Positions 8,466 through 54,447 are shown, counted from the stretch's first letter. The stretch is 64,000 bases of DNA from Haliotis rubra (GCF_003918875.1 NW_025767360.1:186001-250000), one strand, 5' to 3'. Made by a program: numbers and translations. The notes: generated from the letters alone by a model not told the origin.

Positions 8466-11400
8466 ATGCAGCTATTCAGAGTTCCACTTTTGCTACCTTT
8501 ACTGCGTAAGTTAACAGCTATGAAAAGTTACTCCCGTTTCACTGCGTAACGATAAGTGTAAAGTTAACATTTAAGATTTAAATTATTTAGCAGTAGAAAT
8601 GGTAATTATATATGTTATGTCCGTTTCTGCTTTCTCAGTTTTGTCATGCTGGGCAGTTTTCGATTGCGTTTATGGAACTTGTTCGGGTGACAATCAGTGT
8701 CTTAATGGCGGAAAATGCGACTCAGCCACTTCCAAGTGTGACTGTACCGGTACTGGATATGAGGGTGAAACGTGCCAAACTGGTAAGTCAAAGAAATAAT
8801 TTACTAGTATGAGTAAGAAATCCCCACTCATGTAATTAAAAAAAAATACGTAGGTACAGATAACGATCATATGATGCTGTCACAACAACATTTTGTACCA
8901 GACGACTATCCGGGTAAGATTTCGTCTCCAGCAGCCTATAATTGTAAAATGAAGCCACTAGCGGGATAGGAAGGCTACGCTCGGTGAGATAACTGGTGTA
9001 CATAAATGTATTCCAAACTCATATACTGATGTGAATGATGTCAGTGGTAGGTCTGACTGGTCCCGATTCAAACAGATGGCACATGGAATATTGATGTGTG
9101 GGGTGTTACGATAGAGCGCGCCTGCATTTTTTAGTAACTCAAATACTTCGCAGTGACGTATACGTTTGTCTTCAACTTTACTGGGAAGCAGAAAATCAAA
9201 AATGTTTTTTTCATCACATAAACTTCATTATGAGAAGTAAAATCGTTTCATTTTCGTGTTCATTCTTGGTAGACATTGATGAGTGCACAGAAGGTGATCA
9301 TGACTGTGATACCAACGCCGACTGCACAAACACTGACGGGTCCTTCACCTGCGCGTGCAAGCCTAACTATGCTGGAGATGGAAAGACCTGCATAGGTAAA
9401 TGCATACACGGTTTTGTAAATTGCTGTTATTGTAGCATCTCAAGGTTTGCTTAAATTTTGTGTTCTGTGAAACGAAACTAGGCAACTCCATGTATATGAC
9501 TGAACGACGGGAACGCACATAGAATCAACTAAAAGAGAACTTTTGGATGAGTACAAGAACTGTAATGAGGTCTTTGAATGGCATTTAGAAGTGATCCACA
9601 CAAGGAAGATATATGTTCTCTGCCCCATACCATTCATTCGTCTGATAAAGGAGTAGGGACATACTCTGAAATTGTGTTCCTCATAATAAAGAATTTGACA
9701 TTCTCTTCCTTAAGAATTGTAATGTAGCAAAGGTAATGCCCAGACACAATTACAAAACTTCTTTGAGTGACGTTTAGAGGTTGGTGTGATGAACAAAGAG
9801 AAAATCACTTGCTTGATATCGGTGTTAGTAGCTACACCGAAACGTCGCCAATATTAATATTAAGAACTTGTATTTCCATAGAACTCTCCTTGTTGTACAA
9901 TTACAAACGCTGTAGTAGCTTAGTATCACGTATCAGTAGTTCAGTCACAGAAATTTATTATTAACCATGCACGAGATTGTTAAATGTATTCCCGATGGAA
10001 TAGAGACATAATTTTATGAGAACGAGTGCAGTAATTGTATGATTGTTGCTCTGAGCAAAAAATGGAAAAAGCGCAAAAAGTCAAGTCATTGTAAAATATG
10101 ATGGTCAGTGTGTAAGTACTAAGACTATATGATTTTGTTGCACACGTAAATATATATTGAGTATCAGTGTTATTTGTCAAACCAAACATTCTGTAGAGGT
10201 AAAGTACTTTCGTCCCTGTCATGACATGTTGGGTCCATTAATCTCTGTCGTTCATACAGTTGCTGTGGTGAAGTAAATAATATAGTTGAATATAGACAAG
10301 CTCCTGGTTATTGAATGTGGAAATGGAATATATTCCGATATTGAGTATATGTTTTGAATCCTTTCAAAAAGCATTTGCAATAATAAAATGATTGCACATT
10401 TCTTTTTGTTTTAGCTGGCGTGTGTTCCGCAGATGGCAACGAATGTTTAAATGGTGGAACATGTAATATCCCATCAGACGGGACTGCTAGTACATGTCAA
10501 TGTGCAGATGGATATACTGGTAGCCTTTGTGAAAGAGGTAAGTACTATATATAAATACGTCTTCTATTTTATTCTTAGTAGTAGAAATCATCAATAAAAT
10601 ATTTCATTTGTGTTTTCGTTCGCTATATACTAACAGTGATGTGTAATTTTGTATTGAACTTAACTGAGAAACAATACACTAAAATGCATTTGCTCGTCGC
10701 CATGACATAAACTTCATTGGTAGCCGTAATTTCTTTTCATTTTCGTTTTCATTCTTGGTAGACATTGATGAGTGCGCAACCGATGCTGATGACTGTGATA
10801 CCAACGCCGACTGCACAAACACTGAAGGGTCCTTCACCTGTACATGCAAGCATGGCTACGCTGGAGATGGAAAAACTTGCATAGGTAAATGTATACAGTG
10901 TAAACGTTTTGACGTTGTTGCATGCCAGTTGGATTTGTCTAATGTTGATGCTATATCAAACGAAAGTATCACGCTTCTTGTATAGGAGCATGCAGAGCCA
11001 GCTTCTGAAAAGAAAAATAGAATGGAATCTAGTCACTGTTATAATTCAAACTTAAACATTGTCGAACGTAGATTACAATGAAATTATCATTTCTACCGTT
11101 ACAAATGCACATCGACCAGCAGATCCATTAAAACGTGTGAGCAATTAAATCCACCAAAACTGCAAGTGTACCAACATAGCAACCTATGAATCCATCTTGA
11201 AACTAACCTGATCAACATTGAACGATATAAGATGGTCACAATTCGTTTTTCCTCCTTCTTTAGCGGGTGTGTGTTCTGCGGACGGGGATGAATGCCTCAA
11301 TGGAGGAACATGTGACACAAGCAGCACTCCCACCAAGTGTTCCTGTGCGGATGGTTACACGGGGGACACCTGTCAGAATGGTAAGGAAACATTCTTTTTA

Positions 11401-12119
11401 CATGATACGAATCAAAAATAACTTTTGTGCCGGCAATATTCCATCAGTTCCAATCTTTGTTGTCAACTTGTATCAACTTTTTAGATACAATCGAGCATTT
11501 TCTTGACACGAAGTTGTTTGATCAAAGTTACATTTAGTGCCTCAGTATTAAAGCTTCCAAACATTATCAGGTAGACAGGCATTAAAGCTTTACAACATGT
11601 TAAGGTAGACACGTAGCATTTCCAAATGTAACACACGAGTGATATGAATTAATGCAATTTCGTATATTGATGTGTACATGTTACCGCCTGTATCATGTAG
11701 AACATTGCTCAGTGTTCGAAATAGTCTTAAAATTTTGCTAGCCAGTCGGGCTAGCTATGCCTGAAAGTTACTAGTCCACAAAATAATTCACTAACCCGAA
11801 ATTCGAATGAAGTCGCGGCTTTCATCATTAAACTGATAATATGATGAACATTTTTATTAAGCCTTAGTCTTGCATGATTCATAAGTGTATTCAAGCTTAA
11901 CAGTCGCAGAGAGTCATATATTTACATAGTGCAATAGACTCTGCTTTAACCAGATATTTCTTATGAATGTGAAAAAGATTTTGTTGCTTTGTACGAATTC
12001 CACCACATTCGAATGTTATTATTTGTCCTCATACAATCTCTATTGCAGGTGGAGGTACGGTGACGATTTCCGCTTACCTAATGGGCATGACTGTTCTTAC
12101 TTTCTTCGTCATCCTGTGA
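8466..12119 (+). CDS. Secreted, putatively GPI-anchored 5-EGF protein (EGF-cbEGF-EGF-cbEGF-EGF), 246 aa, 7 exons
   Basis: Exons 8466-8505, 8639-8782, 9273-9395, 10415-10537, 10762-10884, 11264-11380, 12049-12119 sum to 741 nt. All introns are GT-AG, phase 1, and the frame is open. Signal peptide [26 protein letters not shown]. Five 6-Cys EGF modules, two with the DIDEC..CxNxxGSFxC calcium-binding consensus. The C-terminus [25 protein letters not shown] is hydrophobic with no cytoplasmic tail. Confidence 0.85.
8905..9110 (+). mobile_element. Ancient degraded copy of the retroposon in intron 2 of the EGF genes
   Basis: tatccgggtaaga..cagcagcctat..gcgggatagg..ggaatattgatg; orthologous at ~41965-42175 and ~51995-52205. 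Confidence 0.5.
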
Positions 12120-12420: not shown

Positions 12421-12555
12421 CTCGCTATAGGTAAAAAATAAAAATTCCCCTGTATGCTTTCGACCGCTGATGACATGTTACTGATGACGTGGAGCTGTCT
12501 CCCAGTGACCACTGACAAAGAGTAAATGTTGTCTACTTTTACTTTACAGTGACAA
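12421..12555. promoter_or_regulatory. Conserved non-coding element downstream of EGF-GPI gene (core CTGATGACGTGG)
   Basis: TGATGACATGTTACTGATGACGTGG..CCCAGTGACCACTGAC..GAGTAAATGTT is conserved at 45215-45350 and 54742-54875, and partly at 29670-29710 and 48321-48375. Confidence 0.55.
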
Positions 12556-12849
12556 ACAATTCAAGTTTAAAATAATCTGAAGATATATGATGTATACATT
12601 ATTCCCTGATATTTGTAAATCTTTGCGAATAAACTTCACCTGCAATGTTTTAACTGTCTTTGAGAATTTATTTAATGACGTTTTAGCAGGCGCCTATTGG
12701 AAGTTAGTGACCATTACCACGTATCATATTCAGTGTGTAATACCATACAGCGATGAGAAATTGATATAACTGATTTTATACAAAGTAAATATCAACGCAA
12801 CCGTCAGAAGTTTGAAGCAGAATGACGGTGACACGTATTAGATTTGAGA

Positions 12850-13880
12850 TGGCTGGACAAGGGAATGATGTTATGAACATCGTGTTACCTCGACAGGATA
12901 CGATGACACGATAAAGATAGACCAAACCTCGCGACGTTCGACATACATGCATAGGTCGCTGCGGAGCAACTCAAAAACAGAGGGCGAGACAAAGCACAGC
13001 AAAACATGCAGAACGCAATATGCAATACCATTAAAGTCATATTATCCATGCTTATACAGATCTCTACTCTTTCATACACAGCAGTTATCTTTAGATATTA
13101 GACTGTGTGAAGTGAAAATTTCAAATTTGCTGCCTGATTATACATTTTACAAAATATCTGTTTCCATTAAATTTGTGAGCGATGCATTCACATTTCGTTG
13201 TTGTGTGTGTGTGTGTTTGCGTTTTTTGTTTGTTTTGTTTTGGCGCGCGTCGGGGTGTGTGTTTGTTGTTTGACGCCGCACTCAGCAATATTCCAGCTAA
13301 ATGGCGGCGGTTTGTAGATAATCGAGACCTGACCAGACATTCCAGTGATCAATAGCATGAGCATCGATCAACAGAATTGGGATACAATGACATGTGTCAA
13401 CCAAGCCAGCAAGCCTGTTCCCGATCACGTAGTTGCCTCCCACGACAAGCATGGGTTGCTGAAGACCAACTCTAACCCTGATCTTCACGGGTTTCATAAT
13501 TCGTTCCGTAGAAATATTTTCACCATATACACCATTTGTTGGACATTTGGAAACCGACAGTATCGGTAGGCTAGTATTTTAGCAACACGTGTTCAGCTAT
13601 CGCTAACTTTCTCTCACTGTAAGTCAATCAAAGTTTGTCGTCACCGTCACCTCGTGGTCTGAACATCTGAACGTTTGAACGTCGAACATCGGGATATAAT
13701 CACTCATTAAACTGACCTCTGGTGATGCAGCTGAAAACCTCATCAAAGCTGTTCTAACAAATTTACACTCTCAATTCAGCTGTCAGGAATCATTGCAGTG
13801 TGCAATGTATACACCTGTCAGAGCCCTTCTCAACCACTATAGTCACAGGACGCGGTCAACAGCACGCTGACGCTTCAGTT
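12850..13880 (-). pseudogene. Eroded ankyrin-repeat-like coding remnant
   Basis: Minus-strand fragments IVVEKGSD, YTLHTAM..IESVNLLE and MDNMTLMVLHIA (the paralog at ~55.35 kb reads MDIFGFN) resemble the ankyrin consensus. Many stops and frameshifts. Confidence 0.35.
13262..13492 (-). mobile_element. Same retroposon family (paralog 55578-55810)
   Basis: Full-length reverse copy ending tcttcacgggt. Confidence 0.85.
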
Positions 13881-14271
13881 CATTAGGCAAATACATTTCA
13901 GTTTAGCCACGTTCTTTGTTATTGTTTGTTTTAAATATATCTGTTGGTACATTAGTTATATCTAGAATACGATCAATTAACTGTTATTCCCTTGTAAGGG
14001 GCTTTTAAGGATTTGATATTATCTTCGTAATTTTACGACACTTCAATCAGTCTAACCGTTGCCTTAAGACACTCCATGTTTGTACATGTATTACGCCAAA
14101 TACACTTGCACGTCTTGGACAAATCTTATGTTTATAGTTGGATGTTCTTTTGGACTTAGATGATAAATATACAAGACATGTGATACATCGATCGTTCGCT
14201 CTATCCATTTAGCTATAGAAGTGTTCAGTGTGAAGAACAATATATGCCCGTCCTATGTTCTATTAAGTAGA

Positions 14272-14420
14272 GGGGCGGTTGGGTAGCCTTGTGATTCGCT
14301 CGGCACGCTAAAGACCCAGGTTCGATTCCCAATATGGGCACAATTTGTGATGCCCATTTCTGGTGTACTTTACTGTGATATTGCTGGAATATTGCGCAAA
14401 ACCAAACTCACTCACTCACT
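14272..14420 (+). mobile_element. tRNA(Asp-like)-derived SINE (paralog 56597-56743)
   Basis: GGGGCGGT head, B box GGTTCGATTCC, GCTGGAATATTGC tail, (CTCA)n end. TSD ctattaagtaga is perfect in the 56.6 kb copy. Confidence 0.88.
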
Positions 14421-16499: not shown

Positions 16500-16561
16500 A
16501 CACTGGATATATAGTTTGCAGTGACGTTGAATCAGTACGGGGCACCACATCCCTCAGACAA

Positions 16562-16804
16562 AACACGTGAAGGTCCGGGTTAGAAATGGTCTTCAGCAAC
16601 CCATGCTTGTCGTAAGAGGCGACTAACGGGATCGGGTGGTCAGGCTCGCTTACTTAGTTCACACATGTCATTGTATCCCAATTGCGTAGAACGATGCTCA
16701 TGCTGTTATTGGATCGTCTGGTCCAGATTCGATTATTTACGGACCGCCGCCATATAGCTGGAATATTGCTGAGGGCAGCGTTAGACAAGAAACCATCCAA
16801 ACAA
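16562..16804 (+). mobile_element. tRNA-less short retroposon with structured 5' end (paralog 58988-59235)
   Basis: ACCCGTGAAG..CGGGT-type head, GTCGTAAGAGGCGAC hairpin, GCTGGAATATTGCT tail; 11-bp TSD ccctcagacaa. Confidence 0.85.
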
Positions 16805-17310: not shown

Positions 17311-17467
17311 ACCCGCGAAGGTTCGGGTTAGAATATTGATCTTCAGTAACACTTGCTTGTCGAGAGAGGCGATTAACGGGATCGGGTGGTCAGGCTCGCT
17401 GACTTGGTTGACACATGTCATCGATTCCCAGTTGCGCAGATAGATGCAGTTAATCACTGGATTGTCA
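17311..17467 (+). mobile_element. Same retroposon family, 3' part lost (paralog 59741-59902)
   Basis: Head and body present, fused to a Tc1 remnant. Confidence 0.82.
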
Positions 17468-17475
17468 AATCACTA

Positions 17476-18050: not shown

Positions 18051-18069
18051 TAACAGTAAGGGATTAGAT

Positions 18070-22506: not shown

Positions 22507-24036
22507 TACTCTCCCAAAAAAGAAACGCATCATGAAAATAGCAATTTCATGTAGCAATGAATTAAAACGTGATTCATTTTACAAAAGGCTTTGCTCTGTT
22601 TATGAGTGCTGTGGTGTTTATGTTTTGAAACATCACAACAAAACGCACCATCCATAAAATACCCGTATTTAACAACATGATTTTTAATTTCGGCGTGTAC
22701 TGTCACAGAATACACAATTCACATGCAATGCACGTGAAAGTTGGGGGACAGATAGTCTCAATGATGGGTATAAAAAGGTTGATCGCTGTCTGTCGATTAT
22801 TCACTGTATTTGGAATATTGTTGACGAACGCCAAATGCCACGTCTAAATGAAGCCAACCGTCATATCGCCATTGGTTTGCTTCATGCTGGCCAGTCTCAA
22901 CGTGAAGTTGCCCGACGCATGAATGATCACCAAAGCACCATTTCACGGCTCTGGGAGAGATATCGCCGGCAGAATTCGGTAGCAGATACCCCTCGTAGTG
23001 GGGCGACCTCGAGCGACCGCTGCGGCGCAGGATCGCTACATCCGGGTACATCACCTGCGTCATCGAACAGCTACGGCGACCAGTACCGCTCAACAAATAG
23101 CCGGATTGAGGAGGCTTTCTGCACAGACCGTCAGGAACAGGTTGAGAGAGGCTGGTTTACGTGTCAGAAGACCTTATTTTGGCCCTGTGTTTCGACAACA
23201 ACATCGTCGTCATCGAGTTCAATGGTGCACCAGCGTTCAGGCCTGGAGCCTACCGAATTGGCGTAGAATCTGGTTCAGTGATGAATCACGATTTCTATTC
23301 GAACGACGCGATGGAAGAATGCGGGTGTACAGACGTCGACGTGAACGTTTCGCCGACGCTTGCGTTCCCCAGGTGGACAGATTCGGCCGGGGCAGTGTTA
23401 TGATGTGGGGAGCGATCACCTGCCGTAGGAGAAGTGATTTGGTGATGATCCAGGGCAACCTGACAGCTCAACGGTACTGTGACGAAATCCTACGCCCACA
23501 CCTCCTTCCAATCATTGATCGCCAGAGGGAGTTGTTTCAACACGACAATGCCAGACCACACACAGCACGTCACACTAGAGACTTCCTCCACTACCACAAC
23601 ATCACTGTGCTCCCCTGGCCCTCAAGATCACCGGACTTAAACCCGATCGAACATCTGTGGGATGCCCTGGACAGGCGGGTGCGACGCCGTAACCCTCAGC
23701 CCCAGACACTTCAACAACTCGCACAGGCACTACAGAGAGAGTGGGCTGCGATTGGGCAACACGAGATTCTGAGACTTATTCGTTCGATGCCGAGGCGATG
23801 CCGTGCAGTTCTGGATGCCCACGGTGGTCACACGAGGTATTGACTTCAGCGCCACCACACGTCTCCATGTGACACTCAAACTGACTTTTCTCGAGTTGGT
23901 GCCAAAGGCGGATAAGTCTGCATTCCCAGTGTGCAATTTCGCTATATTTCATTGACTCATAAAGCCTACAAGATGTTTCAAAATAAACATTAAAAAAAAG
24001 TTGAAATTCCTATATGCGTTTCTTTTTTGGAGAGTA
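22507..24036 (+). mobile_element. Full-length Tc1-family DNA transposon (DD34E), 1530 bp
   Basis: TIR TACTCTCC(C)AAAAAAGAAACGCAT at both ends; TA target duplication at 22505-06 and 24037-38; transposase inside. Confidence 0.95.
22835..23843 (+). pseudogene. Tc1 transposase with a single +1 frameshift (335 aa if corrected)
   Basis: MPRLNEANRHIAIG HTH, GRPR, FSDES, QHDNA, WPSRSPDLNPIE (34 residues between D and E), GGHTRY*. Extra G at ~23000. Confidence 0.93.
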
Positions 24037-26446: not shown

Positions 26447-26666
26447 GACCCGAAGGTCTGGGTTAGGATGAACCTTCAGTAACCCATGCTTGTTGTAAGA
26501 AGCGAATAACGGGATCGGGTGGTCAGGCTCGCTGACTGGGTTGACACATGTCATCGCTTCCCAATTGCATAGATCGATGTTCATGCTGGTCCAGATCCGA
26601 TTATTTACAGACCGCCGCCATATAGCTGGAATATTGGAGTGCACACTCAACTTACTCACTCACTCA
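26447..26666 (+). mobile_element. Same retroposon family
   Basis: 13-bp TSD ctgtattgtaaac; (ACTC)n tail. Confidence 0.88.
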
Positions 26667-26714
26667 CTGTATTGTAAACACTGCATTGGATACATATTTG
26701 ACACAATCATTTTT

Positions 26715-29323: not shown

Positions 29324-29406
29324 ATGCTGGAGTTTCCACTCTGAGGAAGTGCAGTGCGATCGCTTTTCTCCTTCCCCTCACCCTGGTGGCCTTTCTCATT
29401 GTTTAA
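29324..29406 (+). pseudogene. Orphan phase-1 terminal exon encoding a GPI-anchor-like signal
   Basis: Acceptor ttttccctattttcgtag, then (x)AGVSTLRKCSAIAFLLPLTLVAFLIV*. Same phase and design as the other tails, followed by the conserved downstream motif at 29670-29710. No EGF exons found nearby upstream. Confidence 0.6.
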
Positions 29407-29668
29407 AGCAGCCGTCAAACATGTATGCAGTTGTTTGTAACTGTTTATTCTCTTTTTATCATTAAGTTTGTGTTATTCCAAGCAATTACATTTCACTGAA
29501 GATTGTACTTATTATGTTTAATCTTGCATTCTCTGAAATAGAAGTAAAATATCAACATTGACAATCATTGGGGTTTCGTGTGCAGTGTTACATGTATTAT
29601 GTCAATGCTACTGCAAACTGGCTAAGGGGTCACAAAATCACTGTTAGAGTACATACAATTAGGCAATG

Positions 29669-29710
29669 CTGATGACATTTTCTGATGACGTGGGCCTCCG
29701 AACACTGACG
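29669..29710. promoter_or_regulatory. Conserved downstream element, copy 2
   Basis: ctgatgacattttctgatgacgtgggcctccgaacactgac; core 276 nt after the orphan GPI exon stop. Confidence 0.5.
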
Positions 29711-32700
29711 TATAGAAACTGCCATCAACCCTTTAGTCACTTTGACAATATATTCTACTGTTAATTTGTACATTCAGAAGATGCATGTTGCATGTACTTA
29801 TATAACAGGAATTTCGTCCCTAATAAACGCATTATAGTAATTACTGAGAGTTGTGTTTTGGAGCATTTATTACTTTGAGTCCAATGACCAATCCACGACA
29901 ATGAAACATTCATGTCACAGGCCTTGACCATACAGTTCACTTTATTTGCCTCTTTCAAACAGTGCTCACTTGAATTCCACAAAGAGATATACTGGAATGA
30001 ATGAAACCTCCCAGGTTCAGAACAAATTATTTAAAATGAAAGGAAATGTGATGTGAAGGTTATTCAGTGAATACCATGTGCAAGAACTTCCTAATTTATA
30101 ACGTCGTGAGAACCTTCGACATTTTTGGACATCCTCAGGGGCGCAAATGACCCTCTCCTTACTGATCTGATTTTCAGTACATATCAGAATCAGAATTTCT
30201 GCTCAAATTGACAAATTCAATACATGGGAATTTGGCCGAGGCGTTCAACGTAACCTACGGGCCTATCTATGAATTCATATCATCATCATCAATAAAAAGG
30301 AAAGCACTTACCGATCACCAGACTCACCTACGTCGACGCACGTCGTTGTATACATAAATTATCTTGTACGCGACGTTAAATCCTGTTTTTACACCTGACA
30401 TCACCTTGTAAATTGCACGTACCTTTGCATCAGCTACACGATCATGAGTTAGGAACTACTTAAGGCAACTGATACATGTACTCATTGCTGTTCCAGGATC
30501 TTTGATTTTCCTTGACCTCATTATGGTGCTGATTGTTCCTGTGATTAAGGGAAATGTGTAAACCTTGGTCATCCTTTGTAATGGAATAACTGGGGGTTCA
30601 CCTTGTACCAAATCTGCAACTCTGCTATGCGTAAACACCGGTGTTACAGTTTCCAATAATGGACGGATTGTAAGCATGTCCTGTTCTACCGGTAGTAACT
30701 TCATTTCCAGAATAGCGTGTATTTGAAATACACTGACGAGACGTTTGGGGGTCTAACTGACATTTGTATACATATTGGTTGGCGTACAAAGAACATGAAC
30801 ATAAGCTTACAATCAAATCACAACTGGTTTGTGAATCACTTTAGAATAGTAAACAGTGACTTGATGACATCCTTGTACGATGCGAGCCTTCCGGTGATTC
30901 GCGACATCAACTTTTAGAACAGGATAGAAGTGGTGGAATCATTTTCCTTTCACGGACCTGTGTTTTTCGCATGATCGGTTCTCTGTTATCCATATAAGAA
31001 TCACTCCTCATCTGGATAACTAACATGTCTATAATCAGAGTTGAGAATGTGCACTGCATTTCACAATATTATTATGTCTGCGAACCACAACAAGTAACTG
31101 GCTAAATTGTTAAGTAACATCACGTGACAAGGTTTAAGAGAATATAAGCGACAAAAAAATATTTATGAAGAAATCTTTGACAAAACAGAGTGGATTTGAT
31201 GATTTCAGCTATATCATGAGGACTTGTTTATGAATCAATACCCAAAGTAACATAATAGCAGCTGTTGATGAGCAGATGAGCGTTTCAAGACTTAAACATC
31301 CAAGTCTATTGTTCACATGACAGAACAAGAGCACAGACGATACAAATGAACAACATATTGCAACATTGTTGCCACGGATGATTCACATTTAGTATTGTCG
31401 AAACTGTCACGTACCAAAGTTGATGTCTTGAAAATTGTAACCTTGATCAAAGACCATTAGAGCAGGAGTCGAACGACGCTTCTTCAAAGAAAGACCATGT
31501 TCGATTATACCTAAAACGTTGTAAACCTTTTCTACCAAGGCTGGAGCTGCTGAAACATTAATCTTACTCGAAACGAAAGAGAAGTTGACTGTTAGAAAGA
31601 TAAAGCCATCCCATTCATCATACGGTCTTGTGGAAAATGTTTACCTTAACGAGTAGTTCAGTTCAGTGCATTGGTGGAAGGCATATTTGAATTATATCCG
31701 ATTATCGCTATACCTGAAGCATACGTTAAACATTTTTGAGAGATTGCTTTGTTAGTCCAAACAAAGAATTTGAATAATATTCATAAAATTAACATCAAGA
31801 AAAATTGTGCAGAAGGTTCCACATGGAAGGCATGTGTTTTTACTCAATGCTTTACACCTCAATTTTCCATAGATTTATCATTAGGGAAGGTCTACATTTT
31901 CGAATAATAGAAATCATCTTAAAATATATGACCGATATGTTGGTGGCAGTGTGATGTCACAGTGTCTTGGCACCCAACAGAAGTGCAACTTACATCATCA
32001 GCTGCCAGTTTCCTATGACAGAAAAATAAAAATAGATGGTGTCCGTGCAGTGGAATGAAACTATTGCTGATCATGCAAATTTGCAATGTCGATGTAATAT
32101 CTTTCTGAAATTAATATTCTGTTTATTAGAGATTTCATATGACTGTTGTGGTTGAAATGTTTTGATAAATATGCTTTTTAACATATAGATAGCACAATCG
32201 TCAACGGCTGAAGTGTAAATCCAGCTAGGGTCCATGCAAAAAGCGAACGTACAGTAAGACCCCATAGTCCTCAGTGCGGTGATGTATCTTCAGTTGTTGA
32301 CGATTTGTAGCTTGTTTTATATGTTGTATTGTCTGTGGTTTTAGATATACATGCTAGTTTTGCATCTATATCTGTGACTTCTGGTTGTTTTGAATGTAAT
32401 TCTTAAACATGGTTTTATGTTCTCGATTTATGTGTCATGAATGTATAACTTGTTTTCACCAGTATATGGCTGAAATACTGCCGATGTCAAAGGGTATAGA
32501 CAATCACGACGGTCCATCCTGATAGGAACACTAATAAACTAGACTTTGGGTCTCAAAGTATGATCTAGGCGATACCGGGAACGAGTGAAGCATCATTTGC
32601 ACACATTACAGTTGACATTTTAAGACAATGTTTAACAAAGTGTTACAGTATCGGAGTTTCATGTGGTTATCAGTAAGCAAGGTGTTCATTAAATCATGTT

Positions 32701-38982: not shown

Positions 38983-39150
38983 GACTGACTGACTGAGTAT
39001 GGTTTTACTCCGCTTTTAACAATATTCCAGCAATATCAAGGCGGTGAACACCAGCAATGGGCTTCACAAGTTGTACCCATGTGGGGAATCGAACCCGGGC
39101 CTTCGGCGTGACGAGCCAACGCTTTAACCACTAGGCTACCCCACCGCCCC
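38983..39150 (-). mobile_element. tRNA-derived SINE inserted after the segmental duplication
   Basis: 15-bp TSD tgcaa(c/t)tttatgagt; empty site at ~5832-5846. Confidence 0.92.
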
Positions 39151-40506
39151 TGCAATTTTATGAGTACAACGTTGATGGTATAGTCTCTTTTGACATTTTG
39201 AATTTTGTTTTCATTTTCAATTGTTGTGCTTTGACATTTCATTTTTCATTTTCGTGACTATTGTTATGTTTTTACTGAACTCTCAGTGTTGTAAAGCATT
39301 TTCTGATCAGTGAGTTTAATTAGGATGCGATATCCCCGTATGTCCTCAATGAACCCCTCTCCATGCGTAGCAAGGCGTGCTTACAGTAAGTTCATAACTT
39401 ACAAGATACCAGGCGTGACAGATAACTACAGTTTTGAAGAGTATCAGGAGATTAGAGGTGTCGGACTGGGTTGTTCTATTACCGTTTGTGGATTACCTTG
39501 TGCACTGACAATCCCATGGTGTTTGCAAACTAAGACCTGTTACCTTTTTTCAACGACTATGAATCTTCCTTCCATGCACTAAGGTCTTTAGGAATAGTTC
39601 ATTTGAAGTGCACCTCAATGCCAACCAGGCTTGACACTTGATTTCATAAGCTGTGTATGCACAAGCTGATACCTTGTATGTCAAAGTGTTATCCTATTTT
39701 TAGGAATATAGAAGGTACATTGCCTAAACATGTGTTAATTTTATTTAAACAATTTATTCAAAACAACATGGTGTTGTCACGATAGCGTTTGTCAGTGTTA
39801 TTTATATATATAATCAACATGAGACAGCTGTTCATCATTTTCCCTGTATATATCAGTCCACTATAATTGAAACACTATTTAGACAATCGATATGTTTGCT
39901 GACTTGCTTGCCTCTGTCAGATATATTTTTACTTGTTAATGTATTGCTCGTATGATTTTGTCGGGCTAGTGGTCCAGTGACATATGACTTACAAATGTAT
40001 ATTTGTCTTCGACTGTAACAAAACACGTGTACATGAATCACTGCCAAAACACTTTTTATCTGTACCAGAGAAAGGTTGAAGTAACATGGGGTGGAATCAC
40101 CAAAACATTTTTTTTTTATCACAAGCCCTCAATGAACAGAGACCAGGGATATCTCATCCCTTCTGCATACAATGAACTGATAAAAAACAACAGATTAAAG
40201 CACTCCAGCTATCATTGCTAATTAATCTCATCAGCCATGCATATTTTGTTTCTGCCTCAAGGACCATTATTAGCTTCCTTCCTACATCATTACCACCGTG
40301 ACTTGTTGTTATTGTTAATCCCCTTGATTCATACCTAAATGTTGTTATTACTTAATCCCTGTTGATGTATATAAGTCTGTTCTGTTCTGTTAAATGGACG
40401 CCTTTAAGTTTTAAGTAAAAAATTGATAGTACGGATATATGGTGGCAGATTTCTTCATCGTAGACATATATGGCAAGATTTGATATGTTTATCTTGTTTG
40501 ATTATA

Positions 40507-41426: not shown

Positions 41427-44400
41427 ATGCAGCTATTCAGAGTTCCACTTTTCCTACCTTTATTGCGTAAGTTAACAGTTATGAAAAGTGGCTTCCTTCC
41501 TGTGTAACGATACGTGTAAAGTTAACATTTAAGATTTAAATTATTTAGCGGTAGAAATGGTAATTGTTCTTCTTATTCGCAGATAACAATTTAGCAGCAA
41601 TGTTGTGTATAAACTAACAGTTTCCTATAAACATGTGAACACAAACAATGATAATTATACATGTTATGTCCGTTTCTGCTTTCTCAGTTTTGTCATGCTG
41701 GGCAGTTCTCGATGGCGTCTCCGGAACGTGTACGGCTGACGCTGATTGTCTTAATGACGGAAAATGCGACTCAACCTCTTTCAATTGTGACTGTACCGGT
41801 ACTGGGTATGAGGGTGAAACGTGCCAGACTGGTAAGTCAAAAGGAATATTTTACCAGTGTGTGTTCCCAGTTAGAAATTAATTAAAGAAATACGTAAGCG
41901 ATACAAGTGTATTAAGTACAGATAACTATCACATAATACTGTCTCAACAGCATTTTATACCAGGCGACTATCCGCGTAAGATCGATCTTCAGCAGCCTAT
42001 ACTTGTACAAAGAGGCCACTGGCGGGATATGATGGCCACGCTCGGTGAGATAACGGGTGTACATGACTGTATTTCAAACAAATATACTGATGTAAATAAT
42101 GCCAGTCGTAGGTTTGACTGGTCCTGACCCATACAGCGCCGTGATGCACCTGGAATATTGATGTGTGCGGTGCTACGATAGTGAGCGTCTGCATTTTTAA
42201 ATAACTCAAATACTTTGCAGGGACGTACTTTTGTTGTCCACGTTACTGAGAAACAGAAATCTAAAATGTTTTTTTCACATCGTCATAGCATAAACTTCAT
42301 TAGTAGTAGTAAAATGTTTTCATTTTTGTTTTCATTTCTTGGTAGACATTGATGAGTGCGCAACAAATGCTGATGACTGTGATACAAATGCCGACTGCAC
42401 AAACACTGAAGGGTCCTTCACCTGTACGTGCAAGCCTGGCTATACTGGAGATGGAAAGACTTGCACTGGTAAATACATACACTGTTTTGTAAATTGTTGG
42501 TATTGTTTTGCTTAAATTTGATGTTCTGTGAAACGAAACTAGGCTTATCCTCGTTTATGACGGAACAACGATACGTGTATAGAATAAATCAACAGAGAAT
42601 ATTTGTATCAGAACAAGAATTGTAATGTTGCAAAGGTAATGGGAACGGTTTTTTGCGTTGTACTTTTGTAACCAAACACAATTGCAAAAGTGTTTACTTG
42701 CTTTATATTACGTATCAAAGTTCAGGTACTGCCATATGACATTGTTATTGACTTTACAAGAGATTGTTAGATCGAACAGAGATACAATCTTATGGGAACG
42801 AGTGCAGTTATTGTGTGAATCTTGACTGAAAACCGTGGAAAAAGCGTCAAAGGCCAATGGCTTTGTATAATGCGTTTCAAAGGAGGTTGTAGTCATTTCA
42901 AAATGTCATGGTCGATGTCCTCACTACTAGGGCTGTATGGCTTTGTTGCACACTTGCAATTTGTGTTGCAAGGTAGACTATAATTAAGGGATCTTTGACT
43001 GAGTTGTGTTCAGAATATTTCAGTATGTCATGTTAGTGAACATCAGAACATTGTATTGATAGAATACTAAATTGATGAAGGACTTGTCAAACATCGATTT
43101 TCTATTTATTTTAGTGTTAACACTCGGACCAATATTAAGAGCAATATATTGTCACTGTGGTTAGAGCATTTGACAAACATCAGTGCTACTTCGATTGTGT
43201 CATACAGCCTTGTGTAAATGTCGAGAAAACTCAATTTAAGGGGACACAAAGAGTTATGTGATGATGTGTGAAAAGTGACTTTTTGCTGGTAACGCATGCG
43301 GAACTGGTACATGAGACGAAATATGTAACTTGTGTGATATTCGGAAATATACACATATGTAGTAAGGAAATCTGTTACGTTAAGCTGAAAATGAAGTTGA
43401 AGAGGTTTTGATTAGGCGACGTGCATATAATATGCAGGATCGCCATATGTTTGTGCGAATGAAACATGTAAATACAAAGAGTTTGCAATGGGTAAAACTG
43501 ATAGAATATAACGGTATCTAAGGAGCAAAAGCTCAATAATTGTTCGACTGTAGCTCTGCGTGTAACTCCACTGACACTTGCAATAAGTGAAAATGAGTCG
43601 GTGCCTGGCGTCTTAGTCAAATAAGGTTGTATTGATTTTAGCATATGTTCAGTGTTGTAAGTACTGGGAATGTATGGTCACGTTTTTCTTATGTGCAGTA
43701 AGGTAGTCAGTAATCACCCACGTTCTGAAGACTTTACTGATGTCAGTGAATCATGTTGGCCAATAGTATGTTTCAGGGACATTTGTGTTCAAGTTGCTTT
43801 GATGAGCCCCGAGCCTTATCGTTTTATTCCGCTAATCATTAATGCGCTCAAAAAAGTATTTTTCCTTTTTTAAGGAACGCACATTTGATTATTTTGGAAA
43901 GCAAATCACATCTAATGTAATTAAGATGCCGCTTAACGACAATAAGTTGCTATAGCATAATGCACCAGTTACGTTTCCTGAAATCGGGCATATGTTTCAC
44001 AGCAAATATCTTTTTCAACTCAAAGTTCTAATCTAATGATTATTTTTATAGATGTTGATGAATGCACTGAAGGTAAAGATAACTGCCATGAAGACGCTGA
44101 CTGCACCAACACAGACGGCTCCTTCACCTGTACATGCAAGGATGGCTATGTGGGAGACGGAGTGACATGCCAACGTAACAACCTTGCTGAATTTTCGATG
44201 GCTTAAGTATCATTGGCATACGTCGAATAGATCTCGTTTCGCCGGATGTGAAACCATTCTGACTTTTTAATGGTGTATACATTCACAATATTAAACGAAC
44301 AAGGGGCTACTTATAAAATTGAGCAATACTGGTTAGTTTTACTCCAGGCACTATTGCATCACTAAAGGGCCACAGTTCAGGCAACTTTGAAACTATAATG

Positions 44401-44895
44401 TCATACCATTATTTGTTTAAACCTGTTACAAGGATCTGCATTAAATTGATTCTTGTCCCTTTTTAAGTTATGAAAGAGACGCATGTACGTGGACAAACAC
44501 ATTCTCGTCATGTTGTGTTCTTTTCATCTGGCATTTATGCCGATGGCCTTAATCTTGTCAACCTTCTTCTCACATTTGCCTTTACAAGTGTGTAAATAGA
44601 CTACAAAACTTGTGAATTTGCATTTCCTCAATGTTGATGTGTTTTCTGCAATCAATTCTGATGCCTCAAGACACAGTTACCATAACAAACTACGCAAATT
44701 TTATGATAATAATCCATTATCCATTATTTTGATTGTTTAATATTTAATTCAATTATTGTTACCCTGTATCAATGACGGTTTACGATACGACTGACATGAC
44801 TGCACTGTATTTCAGATTCTGGTGCTGCTAAGTTATCGGGACACCTCCTCTTGCTCATTGTTGTTGCTGTCCTCGCTCAGCTAAGTCTCTTCTGA
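41427..44895 (+). CDS. Secreted, putatively GPI-anchored 3-EGF protein (EGF-cbEGF-cbEGF), 169 aa, 5 exons
   Basis: Exons 41427-41466, 41688-41831, 42346-42468, 44052-44174, 44816-44895 sum to 510 nt, all phase 1, open frame. The exon 4 donor is weaker (C/gtaaca). C-terminus [26 protein letters not shown] fits a GPI signal (small residues, spacer, hydrophobic end). Confidence 0.8.
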
Positions 44896-45214
44896 ATACA
44901 ACCGGACCGGAACAAGACCATGCTGTTTGTTAGATGTGTTTGAGTTGCCTACAGAACTTCATGGAAGTATATACTATAATTATGTTGTAATTTGACTGAT
45001 TATGTTTACAAGAGACGCAGTAAATTTCCTTTTAAGTAATGACATCCAAACTTCTGACAGTTGGTGGTACTGGTGACGTTTATGAAATGTTTTATCCTGG
45101 TCAGAAACTCAGTATCAGTCAAGAAAGAACCATGTGTTCAGGGTGTGTCATTTGGACCTGCATTTCAGTGACATTTTAAAAAGAACTCATCTCCTTCATG
45201 GCAATGTAAGTTCC

Positions 45215-45350
45215 TCACTGTAGATAAGAAGACAAAATTCTTCCCTGGTTCCCTTTAGACCGTTGATGACATGTTACTGATGACGTGGACCTGTCCCCCA
45301 GTGACCACTGACACTGAGTAAATGTTATCTACTTCTTGTCTGTAGTGACA
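45215..45350. promoter_or_regulatory. Conserved downstream element, copy 3
   Basis: Aligns with 12421-12555 although the adjacent GPI exon and UTR do not align by eye. Confidence 0.55.
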
Positions 45351-48320: not shown

Positions 48321-48375
48321 TTACTGATGACGTGGATGTTTCTCCCATTGGCTGACACAGATTAAAGTTACCTGT
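48321..48375. promoter_or_regulatory. Conserved element, diverged copy 4 (no adjacent exon recognised)
   Basis: ttactgatgacgtggatgtttctcccattggctgacacagattaaagtta aligns with the core of the other copies. Confidence 0.45.
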
Positions 48376-50649: not shown

Positions 50650-50722
50650 ACTGACCGACTGACAGTTTAGTTTTACGCCGCTTTTAGCAATATTCCAGCA
50701 ATATCACGGCGGGGGACACCAA
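50650..50722 (-). mobile_element. 5'-truncated SINE tail
   Basis: ttttacgccgcttttagcaatattccagcaatatcacggcgggggacacc, flanked by tccgggt(a/g)ac. Confidence 0.8.
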
Positions 50723-52373
50723 AAAATTTCCGGGTGACGATTCTAACAATAAACGGCTGCTACATTGTGTGACACTTTTACCTGATTTTTCTTCCCTGTT
50801 TGTTTTCCCCAGGTGTGTCTTTTCCCTTTCATCTGAAACTGGATTTCTATATTTTTTTTAAAAATCGATATACTTGCTGAATTGTTTGCCTGTCTTATAT
50901 TGTTTTTTACTTGTTTACTGGCCTGGTTATTGGGCTATATCCTATGAATGAAGATATATATAAGAGTAGGCATCAACAGAAGGGTTCACAGTCATGAAAA
51001 TTCAATGCTTAAATCAAAGTATATTTGTATTCAACTGCAACAAAAACATGTGTATGTGAATCACTGCCAAATGAACTTTATATCTGTATCTGAGTCAAGT
51101 TGAAGTTACATCACGTGGATTCTTCAAAAGAAAAAATATTTGTTTACAACTTTATAGACCACACTATAACGACCACACAAATGATAGACATAATTATAGA
51201 CGCGACAAAACCCATTCCACATTCATAAGAAATCTCTGCCAAAAGCTGACTCGATTGTACAATTATTACAACATCATGAGCAGATACTCATGATCAGTAT
51301 TTGTTTGAGAAGTATTACAGTTGTATGATGTTGTTTGTAAGCAAATCAGGTCTGAACCCGATAATCCAGTGATTGTTACTATGCGATACGATGACAGAGT
51401 ATGTGTTTATGAATCACTATAAAATAGTGATGATACCAGGTGAACGTATCCAGCTCCACCGGTGGTACCCGTCTTACACATATGCCAAGTCTAGTCAATT
51501 GTTCAACTCAAAAAAATTCGGGAAAGTATGGTATAAGTCAAAATGGAGATTGCATCGGGCATGTTTTTTGTCACTGACGCATCCAATTTGGAAATTTCCT
51601 CCACTTTTTTACCATAAAACTTCTTGAAAGCTTTTTCTGGAGTGTTGATTCTTTCATTCCCTTGATTGTATGGAGGATTATGGTGAACCTTTTTGGCTCG
51701 AACTAATTACTTACTTACAAAGTCTACTTACCTGTCTGCAAAGGACAGTAAACAATGTCAGTCTATCAGAGATTTATACTTAGAACTTGCATATAACCAT
51801 TAAACACTATTTCTATCTTTAACAATACATTATTAAAAAGGGCTATAGATCGTCAACAACTGAAGGCAGATTACCATACTAGGGATCATGGGGACTTATA
51901 GTGCTCTTTCAATTAAACGAATACGTAAGAGATGCAAATTCATTAAGTACAGAGAACGATCACATTATACTGTCACAAAAGCATTTTGTACCATCTATCC
52001 GGGTAAGATTTGATTCCTGAGCAGCCTATACTTGCAAACAGAAGCCACTAACAAGATAGGATGGCCACGCTCAGTGAGATAGCTGGTGTACATGACTGTA
52101 TTTCAAACACATATATTGATGTAAATGATGCCAGTCGTAGGTTTCACTGGTCTGATCCATACAGCGCCGTGATGCACCTGGAATATTGATGTTTGCGATG
52201 CTACGATAGTGCGCGTCTACATTTTTAAATAACTCAAATACTTTGCAGGGACGTATGATTTTGTTTTCAACTTATCTGAGAAACAGAAAACAAAAATGTG
52301 TTTTTTGTTCACATCACCATCACATAAACATCATTAGCAGTAGTAAAATGTTTTCATTTTTGTTTCCTTTACT

Positions 52374-54447
52374 TGCTGATGACTGTGACACAAACGCCGA
52401 CTGCACAAACACTGAAGGGTCCTTCACCTGTACATGCAAGCCTGGCTACGCTGGAGATGGAGAGACCTGCACAGACCCGCTTTCAAAAAAGCATTTGCAA
52501 TAATAAAATGATTGCACATTTGTTTTAGTTGGCGTGTGTTCCGCAGATGGCAACGAATGTTTAAATGGTGGGACATGTAGTATCCCATCAGACACCACTG
52601 CTAGTACATATCAATGTGCAGCTGGATATACTGGTAGCCTTTGTAAAAGAGGTAAGTACTATACATAAATACGCCTTCTATTTTATTCTTAGTAGTAGAA
52701 ATCATCAATAAAATATTTCATTTGTGTTTTCGTTCGCTGTATACTAACAGTGACGTGTAATTTTGTTTTGAGCTTAGCTAAGAAACAATACACTAAAATG
52801 CATTTGCTCGTCACCATGACATAAAATTCATTGGTAGCCGTAATTTCTTTTCATTTTCGTTTTCATTCTTGGTAAACATTGATGAGTGCCCAACCGATGC
52901 CGATGACTGTGATACCAACGCCGACTGCACAACCACTGAAGGGTCCTTCACCTGCACTTGCAAGCCTGGCTACGCTGGAGATGGATAAACTTGCATAGAT
53001 AATTGTATACAGTGGAAACGGTTTGACGTTGTTGCATGCCAGTTTGATTTGTCTAATTTTGATGCTTTATCAAACGAAAGTATGACGCTTCTTGTATAGG
53101 AGCATGCAGAGCCAGCTTCTGAAAAGAAACATAGTACGGAATCTAGTCACTGTTGTAATTCAAACTTAAACATTGTCGAACGTAGATGACAATGACATTT
53201 TCATTTGTACCGTTACAAATGCACTTCCATTATTAGACAACAGAGCGACCAGCAGATCCATTCAAAAGTGTGAGCAATTAAGTCCACCAAAACTGCAAGC
53301 GTACCAACATAGCAACCTATGAATCCATCTTGAAACTTTCCTGATCAACATTTAACGATATAAGATGGTCACAATTCGTTTTTCCTCCTTCTAGAGGGTG
53401 TGTGTTCTGAGGACGGGGATGAATGCCATTAATGGAGGTACATGTGACACAAGCAGCACCCCCACCACGTGTTCCTGTGCGAATGGTTACACGGGGGACA
53501 CCTGTCAGAATGGTAAGGAAACATTCTTTTTACATGATACGAATCAAAAATAACTTTTGTGCCGGCAATATTCCATCAGTTCCAATCTTTGTTGTCAACA
53601 TGTATCAACTTTTTAGATACAATCGAGCATTTTTTTCTGACACAAAGTTGTTTGATCAAAGTTACATTTAGGGCCTCAGTATTAAAGCTTGCAAACATTA
53701 TAAGGTAGACAGGCATTAAAGCTTTACAACATGTTAAGGTAGACACGTAGCATTTCCAAATGTAACACACGAGTGATATGAATTACTGCAATTTCTTATA
53801 TTGACGTGTACATGTTACCGCCTGTATCATGTAGAAAATTGCTCAGTGTTCGAAATAGTCTTAAAATTTTGATAGCCAGTCGGGCTAGCTATGCCTGAAA
53901 GTCACTAGTCCACAAAATAATTCACTAACCCGAAATTCGGATGAAGTCGCGGGTTTCATCATTAAACTGATAATATGATGAACATTTTTTATTAAGCCAT
54001 AGTCTTGCATGATTCATAAGTGTATTAAAGCTTAACAGTCGCAGAGAGTCATATATTTACAATATGACTCCATGACAATTCACTTGGAGATTTACTGTCC
54101 CGACTGGATTTTTACTCGCCACTGGCTAGCGGGACAGTGGCTATTTCGAACACTGGAATTGCTACTCTTGCCTTGTGTTTGTGACGGGTGCGAACACCTG
54201 GTATAATCACTGTTTAAAATGATTCCTGAACACATGTTCATTATATAGTCGGAATAGTGCAATAAACTCTGCTTTAACCAGATATTTCTTATGAATGTGA
54301 AAAACGCTTTGTCGCTTTGCACAAATTCCACCACAGTAGAATTTTATCATTTGTACACACACAATCTCTACTGCAGGCGGAGGGACAGTGAAGATTTCCG
54401 CATACCTAGTGGGGATGACTGTTCTCACTTTCTTCCTCATCCTGTGA
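52374..54447 (+). pseudogene. 5'-truncated pseudogene of EGF gene 1 (exon 3-7 homologues)
   Basis: 52374-52474 has lost its acceptor and donor by deletion. 52529-52651 keeps splice sites but has Cys4->Tyr. 52876-52998 has AG->AA, TAA at 52986-52988 and GT->AT. 53395-53512 has a +1 frameshift. The terminal GPI exon 54377-54447 is intact. No signal-peptide exons. Confidence 0.85.
53844..54155. mobile_element. hAT-like MITE (left part only at 11710-11926)
   Basis: 15-bp TIR CAGTGTTCGAAATAG; 8-bp TSD (a/g)aattgct. Confidence 0.85.

What the first reader, a model, noticed from the sequence alone, without database searches (positions are those of the whole stretch)
8466..54447. Tandem family of tiny GPI-anchored multi-EGF surface proteins built from interchangeable phase-1 exons
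Seen: two intact spliced genes (246 aa/5 EGF and 169 aa/3 EGF), one pseudogene and one orphan tail. The ORF track does not show them as genes. Each protein is only signal peptide + EGF modules + hydrophobic C-terminal signal. Each EGF has its own phase 1-1 exon, and there are three mutually unalignable tail exons. Established: symmetric phase-1 exons permit shuffling, and this C-terminal pattern is typical of GPI-addition signals. Inference: a lineage-specific birth-and-death family of variable cell-surface ligands or decoys (recognition, mucus/shell matrix, gamete or immune role unknown). I do not recognise it as a named gene.
Basis: partly seen in the sequence, partly recalled or inferred. 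Interest (0 to 1): 0.8.

Follow-up and report, generated by a model that had tools for sequence, protein, structure and literature searches.

The report
Abalone tandem family of small EGF surface proteins
The window holds two intact genes, one dead copy and one stand-alone tail exon of an abalone-only family of small secreted proteins built only from EGF modules with a probable lipid (GPI) anchor signal; it is a real and tidy example of exon shuffling, uncharacterised, but built from well-known parts.

Summary
Confirmed. The window is Haliotis rubra contig C2470:186001-250000.

Gene 1 is 7 exons, 741 nt, 246 aa, 5 EGF. Gene 2 is 5 exons, 510 nt, 169 aa, 3 EGF. All introns are GT/AG and phase 1.
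- Pseudogene: 52375-54447 is 5'-truncated and multiply disabled.
- Orphan tail: 29324-29406 is a third hydrophobic tail type.
- External support: a RefSeq model of the next paralog (XP_046547196, 244 aa) and the H. rufescens gene have the same seven-exon plan. dN/dS of gene 1 against H. rufescens is 0.32, and all 30 cysteines are kept.
At least 12 leader-bearing loci, mostly head-to-tail over about 580 kb of this contig, with more on other contigs. Leader-bearing relatives were found only in Haliotis.
- Turnover: whole EGF exons and whole tail modules have been gained, lost and replaced between paralogs.

GPI anchoring and surface function remain inference. No RNA run was listed, so no junction was tested with reads. 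Neither window gene was retrieved among public proteins. The parts are textbook: phase 1-1 EGF exons, and the signal + EGF + GPI plan known from Plasmodium P25/P28. Two first-reader notes (s1-325347, s1-335163) report similar arrays on other pieces of this genome. Joined spliced proteins were never sent to a search tool.

The parts
8466..8505 (+). Gene 1 exon 1: start codon and first half of the signal peptide ([13 protein letters not shown]), phase-1 donor gtaagt
   Evidence: The exon is conserved in all paralogs. Upstream in-frame stops in gene 2 and L022 fix this ATG as the start.
8639..8782 (+). Gene 1 exon 2: second half of the signal peptide plus EGF1
9273..9395 (+). Gene 1 exon 3: calcium-binding EGF (DIDEC...)
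10415..10537 (+). Gene 1 exon 4: EGF (CLNGGTC type)
10762..10884 (+). Gene 1 exon 5: calcium-binding EGF
11264..11380 (+). Gene 1 exon 6: EGF
12049..12119 (+). Gene 1 exon 7: tail type 1 ([23 protein letters not shown], stop), GPI-signal-like
12421..12555 (+). Conserved element downstream of gene 1's tail (core CTGATGACGTGG at 12481)
29324..29406 (+). Tail type 3, the 'orphan' (AGVSTLRKCSAIAFLLPLTLVAFLIV, stop); no EGF exon nearby
29650..29750 (+). Conserved element downstream of tail 3 (core at 29682)
41427..41466 (+). Gene 2 exon 1: start codon and first half of the signal peptide
41688..41831 (+). Gene 2 exon 2: rest of the signal peptide plus EGF1
42346..42468 (+). Gene 2 exon 3: calcium-binding EGF. 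It lies in a 263-bp segment (42293-42555) that is absent from the otherwise collinear paralogs at 60 and 138 kb.
44052..44174 (+). Gene 2 exon 4: calcium-binding EGF, donor gtaaca
44816..44895 (+). Gene 2 exon 5: tail type 2 ([26 protein letters not shown], stop), GPI-signal-like
45214..45350 (+). Conserved element downstream of gene 2's tail (core at 45277)
48324..48335 (+). Extra core element with no tail upstream; probably the relic of a displaced tail-1 module
52375..53514 (+). Pseudogene EGF exons: 52375-52474 truncated; 52528-52650 Cys-to-Tyr; 52875-52997 AG and GT lost plus TAA; 53397-53514 frameshift
54377..54447 (+). Pseudogene tail type 1 (open, 86% identical to gene 1's tail)
54741..54875 (+). 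Conserved element downstream of the pseudogene's tail (core at 54802)

Best explanation
Genes 1 and 2 are intact members of a Haliotis-restricted, tandemly arrayed family of small secretory proteins.

Shown:
- Each gene has its own start, a 26-residue signal peptide split over two exons, a variable string of alternating EGF and calcium-binding EGF modules, and one short terminal exon that ends in a hydrophobic stretch and a stop.
- Each module after EGF1 has its own phase 1-1 exon; EGF1 shares exon 2 with the second half of the signal peptide.
- The reading frames are under purifying selection across species.

Inferred:
- The protein enters the ER, where the terminal peptide is exchanged for a GPI anchor at the small residues just after the last EGF (NGGG in tail 1, SGA in tail 2).
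- A short, calcium-stiffened EGF rod then stands on the outer face of the cell, with the fast-evolving EGF1 at its tip as the likely contact surface.
- The role is probably adhesion or recognition; tissue and partner are unknown.

The family evolves by unequal crossing-over. That duplicates genes, adds or drops whole in-frame EGF exons, and replaces whole 3' modules (tail exon plus a conserved downstream element).
For: Gene models. Both models splice cleanly: all GT/AG, all phase 1, 246 and 169 aa. The RefSeq model XP_046547196 of the paralog at 262 kb maps with exon sizes 40/138/123/123/123/117/71, against 40/144/123/123/123/117/71 for gene 1. The H. rufescens gene has the same seven exons.

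Selection. dN/dS is 0.32 against H. rufescens at dS 0.52, with the leader and tail constrained too; it is 0.44 against the 262-kb paralog.

Tails.
- Tail 1: 11 copies, no indels in the exon against gap-rich flanks, variable columns 9/6/14 by codon position, stop kept in 10 of 11.
- Tail 2: 12 copies without indels.
- A filter for a phase-1 acceptor plus a short ORF with small residues followed by an uncharged hydrophobic end picks only the three family tails in 64 kb on both strands.
- No tail has a charged residue after the 13-17-residue hydrophobic stretch.

Domains. cbEGF exons score E 1e-12 to 1e-15 in Pfam.

Family and turnover. At least 12 leader-bearing loci. Exon gain and loss is visible between gene 2 and the 138-kb gene. 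A decayed tail 1 lies behind a live tail 2.

EGF1. Pooled pN/pS is 1.03 in EGF1 against 0.37 in the adjacent leader, among the five closest paralogs.
Against: - No RNA run was listed, so no junction was tested with reads and expression of the two window genes is unproven.
- Neither gene's product appeared among public proteins of 103-423 aa, so RefSeq may not model them.
- No SignalP or GPI predictor was available; anchoring rests on sequence rules.
- Gene 1 has an extra Cys in the signal peptide's c-region.
- dN/dS between genes 1 and 2 over exons 1-3 is 0.69, which is weak constraint.
- EGF1's ratio near 1 is not statistically distinguishable from neutrality.
Confidence: 0.7

Rival explanations
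1. The genes are real, but the hydrophobic tail is a short membrane-spanning anchor, or is simply cleaved so that the EGF rod is secreted (for example into mucus or shell matrix). On this reading there is no GPI anchor.
For: No GPI predictor was run. EGF-only secreted proteins occur in mollusc shell matrices. One copy (P0069, 400 kb) has lost the stop and gained 7 residues including an Arg.
Against: The hydrophobic stretches are only 13-17 residues long. In three unrelated tail types and about 30 copies they end at the C-terminus with no flanking basic residue. Each is preceded by 6-8 residues and a cluster of small residues. By established knowledge, that is the GPI-signal pattern.
Confidence: 0.15
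2. Genes 1 and 2 are recently duplicated copies that look intact but are silent or decaying. Only some paralogs, such as the RefSeq-modelled one at 262 kb, are functional.
For: Neither gene was retrieved as a public protein. dN/dS between genes 1 and 2 is 0.69. A clear pseudogene sits 8 kb away. Gene 2's last donor is the weaker gtaaca.
Against: All 10 introns keep GT/AG. There is no stop or frameshift in 741 or 510 nt. All cysteines are kept. dN/dS of gene 1 against H. rufescens is 0.32. The promoter-proximal 1.2 kb is 90% conserved between the two genes.
Confidence: 0.12
3. The exons are parts of one very large multi-EGF gene, or of a cluster with shared promoters or constant exons, and not separate small genes.
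For: All family exons on the contig are on the + strand. Two RefSeq isoforms at 262 and 400 kb share an identical first exon, MKVFGQYWFLQ. H. rufescens has a 374-aa model spanning more than 25 kb.
Against: Each unit begins with its own ATG and signal exon and ends with its own stop. The shared first exon is itself triplicated, with one copy just upstream of each gene. RefSeq models in three species are 146-265 aa.
Confidence: 0.03

Closest known systems
Plasmodium P25/P28 ookinete surface proteins (Pfs25, Pvs25, Pvs28)
   Same: The same plan: signal peptide, a short string of EGF-like domains and nothing else, then a C-terminal GPI signal, about 200 aa in total. Weak Pfam hits to Pvs28 and MSP1 EGF models fall below their cut-offs.
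   Different: There is no sequence relationship beyond the EGF fold. The abalone modules are animal-type cbEGF/hEGF. The Plasmodium genes are not built from one-module phase-1 exons and are not a large tandem array. The analogy comes from my own knowledge and was not tested here.
EGF arrays of Notch, Delta-like, NELL2, uromodulin and fibrillin
   Same: These are the best sequence matches among solved structures: NELL2 EGF region at E 6e-25, DLL1 at 2e-20, Notch1 EGF repeats at 7e-19, uromodulin at 3e-9. The cbEGF consensus DxDEC...CxNxxxxFxC is met. The CLNGGTC loop fits the O-fucose motif of Notch-type EGFs (read directly from the sequence).
   Different: Those are large multidomain proteins with transmembrane, ZP, DSL, vWC or TSPN parts. 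Here nothing but EGF is detected. The RefSeq '-like' names reflect only the EGF repeats.
Molluscan shell-matrix EGFL / EGFZP proteins (Gigasin-2, LUSP-17; PMC9290575)
   Same: Small secreted molluscan proteins with tandem EGF domains, encoded by tandemly duplicated genes, evolving by duplication and domain loss.
   Different: EGFL/EGFZP have two EGFs plus a ZP or ZP-like domain, and gastropods have only the ZP + TM form. The abalone family has 2-6 or more EGFs, no ZP domain and GPI-like tails.
Cripto/TDGF1 (EGF-CFC)
   Same: A small GPI-anchored animal protein with an EGF-like module carrying an O-fucose-type site (my own knowledge).
   Different: It has one EGF plus a CFC domain, is single-copy and is conserved in vertebrates. 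No CFC domain is present here.

Membership tests
EGF / calcium-binding EGF domain superfamily | Six-cysteine EGF pattern with significant profile match | tested here: met
   All 8 intact exons match. EGF_3/EGF_CA score 47-57 bits (cut-offs 27-28.5). PF00008 scores 29-35 bits for exons 4 and 6. EGF1 is borderline at 19-21 bits against a 21.5 cut-off.
EGF / calcium-binding EGF domain superfamily | cbEGF consensus D/N-x-D/N-E/Q-C ... C-x-D/N-x4-F/Y-x-C | tested here: met
   DIDEC/DVDEC ... CTNT(E/D)GSFTC is present in exons 9273-9395, 10762-10884, 42346-42468 and 44052-44174.
GPI-anchored proteins | N-terminal signal peptide | tested here: inconclusive
   The leader is MQLFR, then a 15-residue hydrophobic core, then V-x-G before the first EGF cysteine. 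It is conserved in all paralogs and three species. It was judged by rules only; no SignalP was available.
GPI-anchored proteins | C-terminal signal: small omega residues, 5-10 residue spacer, 12-20 uncharged hydrophobic residues ending the protein | tested here: inconclusive
   All three tail types fit by inspection and by a simple filter that is specific within the window. No trained predictor was run.
GPI-anchored proteins | Experimental release by PI-PLC or a detected anchor | not testable with these tools
   Bench experiment.
Molluscan EGFL/EGFZP shell matrix proteins | Two EGF domains followed by a ZP or ZP-like domain | tested here: not met
   Pfam finds only EGF families in P0064 and P0021 and in the window exons. 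The definition is from PMC9290575.
Notch / Delta / NELL2 / uromodulin (RefSeq '-like' names) | Family-specific non-EGF domains (LNR/ANK, DSL/MNNL, TSPN/vWC, ZP) | tested here: not met
   None was detected. The proteins are 146-265 aa and consist of EGF only.
Haliotis leader-EGF-tail family (RefSeq XP_046547196 and relatives) | Split leader M(Q/L)LFRVP..LPLL | (V/L)L(S/T)CWAVL.GV.G, all-phase-1 EGF exons, tail type 1 or 2 | tested here: met
   Genes 1 and 2 have all three features. Gene 1 has the same seven-exon plan as XP_046547196 and the H. rufescens gene.

The most novel reading that the evidence does not exclude
The 3' end of these genes is a mobile cassette. Three non-homologous GPI-signal exons are each coupled, 276-382 nt downstream, to the same conserved element (core CTGATGACGTGG).

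Cassettes have replaced one another between paralogs. Tail-3 cassettes are kept under constraint as stand-alone units 12-36 kb behind EGF genes. They may be alternative distal terminal exons. Because the GPI signal is cut off, they would give the same mature protein a different anchoring efficiency, a different fate (anchored or shed) or different regulation. The shared element would then be a family-specific 3' processing or regulatory signal.
Probability: 0.15. Interest if true: 0.6.

Novelty: new member of a known kind. Interest (0 to 1): 0.4.

Why it matters
It adds two apparently unannotated genes to an uncharacterised, abalone-restricted surface-protein family that automatic annotation hides under misleading Notch/NELL2/uromodulin-like names.

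The locus is also an unusually clean, datable record of exon shuffling. A single 263-bp segment carrying one in-frame EGF exon is present or absent between 92%-identical paralogs, a block of four EGF exons differs likewise, and one gene's anchor signal has been replaced while the old one decays behind it.

If the proteins sit on the cell surface with a fast-evolving distal EGF, they are candidates for recognition in immunity, settlement, gamete contact or mantle-shell contact. All of these are of interest in a farmed species. None of this changes known principles.

Tried and rejected
- RNA evidence. The look-up of sequencing runs listed no run, so read laying could not be used.
- Exact-protein look-ups. 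Those for the H. rubra models returned nothing.
- Public models of genes 1 and 2. Word searches with P0013 and P0066 did not return them. An exact look-up of the joined products was left out because a spliced protein has no reference. Joined sequences were used only inside local scripts for length, translation and dN/dS.
- More genomic context. A pattern search was used instead.
- Shared-promoter cluster (protocadherin-like). Rejected, because the shared first exon is locally triplicated.
- Tail 1 behind tail 2 as a live alternative exon. Rejected for the 72.5-kb copy, which has an in-frame TAG and a 3-nt deletion.
- Conserved downstream block as a coding exon. Rejected, because all frames have stops in at least one copy.
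- Conserved downstream block as a known RNA. Only a sub-threshold snoRNA hit lies beside it, at E 0.36.
- Shell-matrix EGFL/EGFZP membership. Rejected, because there is no ZP domain.
- Literature. Searches by accession and by signature peptides found nothing.
- Upstream partners of tail 3. No EGF exon and no conserved block lies within 10-20 kb upstream of the copies examined.
Full report
WHAT IS THERE

The window is eukaryotic, with 36-47% GC and no long ORFs. It is Haliotis rubra contig C2470 (624,275 bp), positions 186001-250000.

A six-cysteine scan finds five EGF motifs at 8680-11373 and three at 41729-44170, all on the + strand. Each motif sits in a short open frame bounded by a pyrimidine tract plus AG and by a GT donor. 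Pfam scores the DIDEC-type exons as EGF_3/EGF_CA at E 1e-12 to 1e-15. It scores the others as EGF at 1e-6 to 1e-8. EGF1 is borderline.

GENE MODELS

| Gene | Exons | CDS | Product |
|---|---|---|---|
| Gene 1 | 8466-8505, 8639-8782, 9273-9395, 10415-10537, 10762-10884, 11264-11380, 12049-12119 | 741 nt | 246 aa, 5 EGF |
| Gene 2 | 41427-41466, 41688-41831, 42346-42468, 44052-44174, 44816-44895 | 510 nt | 169 aa, 3 EGF |

All ten introns are GT..AG and phase 1.

The signal peptide is split. Exon 1 encodes MQLFRVPL(L/F)LPLL and exon 2 continues with LLSCWAV...G before the first cysteine. An in-exon ATG at 8599 gives the same length by coincidence. However, the upstream exon is conserved in every paralog and is used by the RefSeq models. 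Stops upstream of the MQLFRV codon in gene 2 and in the 262-kb paralog fix that ATG as the start.

INDEPENDENT SUPPORT

An exhaustive protein search with exon 2 returned small Haliotis proteins whose match runs into the leader. Their sources are RefSeq models from H. rubra, H. rufescens and H. cracherodii, under automatic names such as notch 1-like, SVEP1-like, NELL2-like, uromodulin-like and delta-like.

- XP_046547196 (244 aa) maps to the paralog at 262-267 kb, which starts about 11 kb beyond the window. Its exon sizes are 40/138/123/123/123/117/71, against 40/144/123/123/123/117/71 for gene 1.
- The H. rufescens gene for XP model P0065 has the same seven exons.
- Gene 1 against H. rufescens gives dS 0.52, dN 0.17 and dN/dS 0.32. 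All 30 EGF cysteines are kept, and the leader (0.49) and tail (0.21) are constrained as well.
- Gene 1 against the 262-kb paralog gives 0.44, with exons more conserved than the adjacent introns.
- Genes 1 and 2 over their shared exons give 0.69.

THE TAILS

Tail 1 ([23 protein letters not shown]) recurs in at least 15 loci.
- Eleven aligned copies, including H. rufescens, have no indel in the 71-nt exon, while the flanks are gap-rich.
- Major-allele frequency is 0.86 in the exon against 0.70-0.72 in the flanks.
- Variable columns by codon position are 9/6/14, and the stop is kept in 10 of 11.

Tail 2 ([26 protein letters not shown]) has 12 copies on C2470, C469 and C897. They align without indels behind a conserved tttcag acceptor. 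Tail 2 also ends RefSeq models in H. rufescens and H. cracherodii.

Tail 3 (AGVSTLRKCSAIAFLLPLTLVAFLIV) is at 29324-29406.
- It has five more copies, all on C2470 between family genes.
- Conservation peaks at the exon (92-100%) and again 276 nt downstream (96-100%), against 76-86% in between.
- No EGF exon and no other conserved block lies within 10-20 kb upstream.

A filter for a phase-1 acceptor, a short ORF, small residues first and an uncharged hydrophobic end picks only the two gene tails and the pseudogene tail in the whole window on both strands.

None of the tails has a charged residue after the 13-17-residue hydrophobic stretch. All have a cluster of small residues 6-8 positions before it. 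By established knowledge this is the GPI-signal pattern and not a transmembrane anchor. No trained predictor was available, so GPI anchoring stays an inference.

THE PSEUDOGENE

The copy at 51911-54447 starts inside the equivalent of intron 2, so it has no leader and no EGF1. Its lesions are:
- the first cbEGF is 5'-truncated;
- the following intron is almost wholly deleted;
- the next exon has a Cys-to-Tyr change;
- the next exon has lost its AG and its GT and carries a TAA;
- the next exon has a 2-nt deletion at the acceptor and a +1 insertion;
- the tail is still open.

FAMILY AND TURNOVER

Exon-2 homologues that include the leader occur at 12 loci. Ten are on C2470 between 30 and 610 kb, all on the + strand. 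The others are on C446 and C440. EGF number per locus ranges from 2 to 6 or more.

Gene 2 is collinear at 92-93% with the six-EGF, tail-2 gene at 138-148 kb, with two differences:
- it has a 263-bp segment (42293-42555) carrying one complete cbEGF exon with its splice sites, which that gene and the 60-kb gene lack;
- it lacks the 5.4 kb that holds four EGF exons there.

Behind the tail 2 of the 60-kb gene lies a tail-1 copy with an in-frame TAG and a 3-nt deletion, still followed by its own downstream element. The tail-less core element at 48324 behind gene 2 is best read as the last trace of the same kind of displaced module.

So genes, single EGF exons and whole 3' modules have been gained, lost and replaced. 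Phase 1-1 symmetry keeps every product in frame. In H. cracherodii the RefSeq model uses three of six available EGF exons.

The alternative first exon MKVFGQYWFLQ, shared by two RefSeq isoforms 140 kb apart, is itself present three times, each copy just upstream of a family gene. The genes are therefore separate units and not a shared-promoter cluster.

HINTS ON FUNCTION

- Among the five closest paralogs, EGF1 has pooled pN/pS of 1.03, against 0.37 for the adjacent leader.
- Changes are confined to the loops before the invariant CDCTGTGY(E/D)G(E/D)TC half.
- In the closest pair, EGF1 differs at 12 of 96 sites while the intron differs at 6%.
- This fits a relaxed or diversifying distal contact surface, but it is not statistically distinguishable from neutrality.
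- The cbEGF consensus is intact. The CLNGGTC loop fits the O-fucose motif of Notch-type EGFs (read directly from the sequence).

COMPARISON WITH THE KNOWN

By sequence, the nearest solved structures are the EGF arrays of NELL2, DLL1, Notch1 and uromodulin. None of their defining non-EGF domains is present.

The molluscan shell-matrix EGFL/EGFZP families need a ZP or ZP-like domain (PMC9290575), which is absent here. In overall plan the closest analogue is the Plasmodium P25/P28 family; this rests on my own knowledge and is analogy only.

No paper mentions the accessions or signature peptides. Leader-bearing relatives were found only in Haliotis.

LIMITS

- No RNA run was listed, so no junction was tested with reads.
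- Neither window gene was retrieved as a public protein.
- The joined spliced products were built only inside local scripts and were never sent to a search tool, so an exact look-up of them was left out.

VERDICT

The birth-and-death, exon-shuffling reading is supported and extended. GPI anchoring and a surface recognition role are plausible but untested. The components are textbook, so interest is moderate. The most unusual feature is the exchangeable tail-plus-element cassette.

Noticed in passing
window 12421-12555, 29650-29750, 45214-45350, 48324, 54741-54875; also L041:16208 (H. rufescens) and L056:25337 (H. cracherodii): A conserved element of about 100 nt with core CTGATGACGTGG (preceded by TGATGACAT, followed by ...CCCAGTGACCACTGAC) lies 276-382 nt after the stop of all four tail exons in the window (types 1-3) and recurs downstream of the tails in nearly all paralog loci checked; it is kept in all three Haliotis species. 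It is not coding and not a known Rfam family. TGACGTGG resembles a CRE/UPRE-type site (my own knowledge). It could be a 3'UTR or regulatory element.
   Followed up: partly
window 22998-23840 (+) and 27852-28481 (-): A Tc1/mariner-type transposase ORF (281 aa; DDE_3 at E 6e-16, HTH_Tnp_Tc3_2) and a second, truncated copy on the other strand (HTH only). Both lie between gene 1 and tail 3.
   Followed up: partly
window 13256-13499, 16561-16800, 17311-17466, 26452-26912, 58989-59235, 59741-59902: A short interspersed repeat of about 200-240 bp, present in both orientations at 73-81% identity, and also found in other cluster loci.
   Followed up: no
window 14271-14420, 38980-39155, 58762-58930, 62565-62730: A second interspersed repeat of about 165 bp (74-91% identity), frequent across the cluster in both orientations.
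   Followed up: no
G000:C2470:96173, 261087, 394461: An identical 33-nt alternative first coding exon (MKVFGQYWFLQ), used by RefSeq isoforms X2, is triplicated; the 261- and 394-kb copies lie a few kb upstream of family genes. No copy lies in the window.
   Followed up: yes
L028 (G000:C446:2638000-2647999), RefSeq XP_046559769 (P0015): This RefSeq model skips the last cysteine of the final EGF, reads the tail-1 exon in another frame, and runs on into the start of the conserved downstream element. Either the locus is mis-modelled or there is a real 3' intron reaching that element.
   Followed up: partly
L056 (H. cracherodii JAJLRC010000019.1:15664066-15698986): The locus holds six EGF exons, including a near-identical duplicated cbEGF+EGF pair. 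The 187-aa RefSeq model uses only three of them, which suggests exon skipping or a conservative model.
   Followed up: partly
window 12581-12659 (+): A sub-threshold C/D-box snoRNA hit (RF00527, 26 bits against a gathering score of 44, E 0.36) just after the conserved element. Probably chance.
   Followed up: no
P0008 (H. rufescens XP_048242230, 177 aa): A more distant small protein with a different signal peptide, three near-identical EGFs and a hydrophobic tail (...VVVRMSAYCVIIGL...) that faintly recalls tail 1. It may be a sister subfamily.
   Followed up: no
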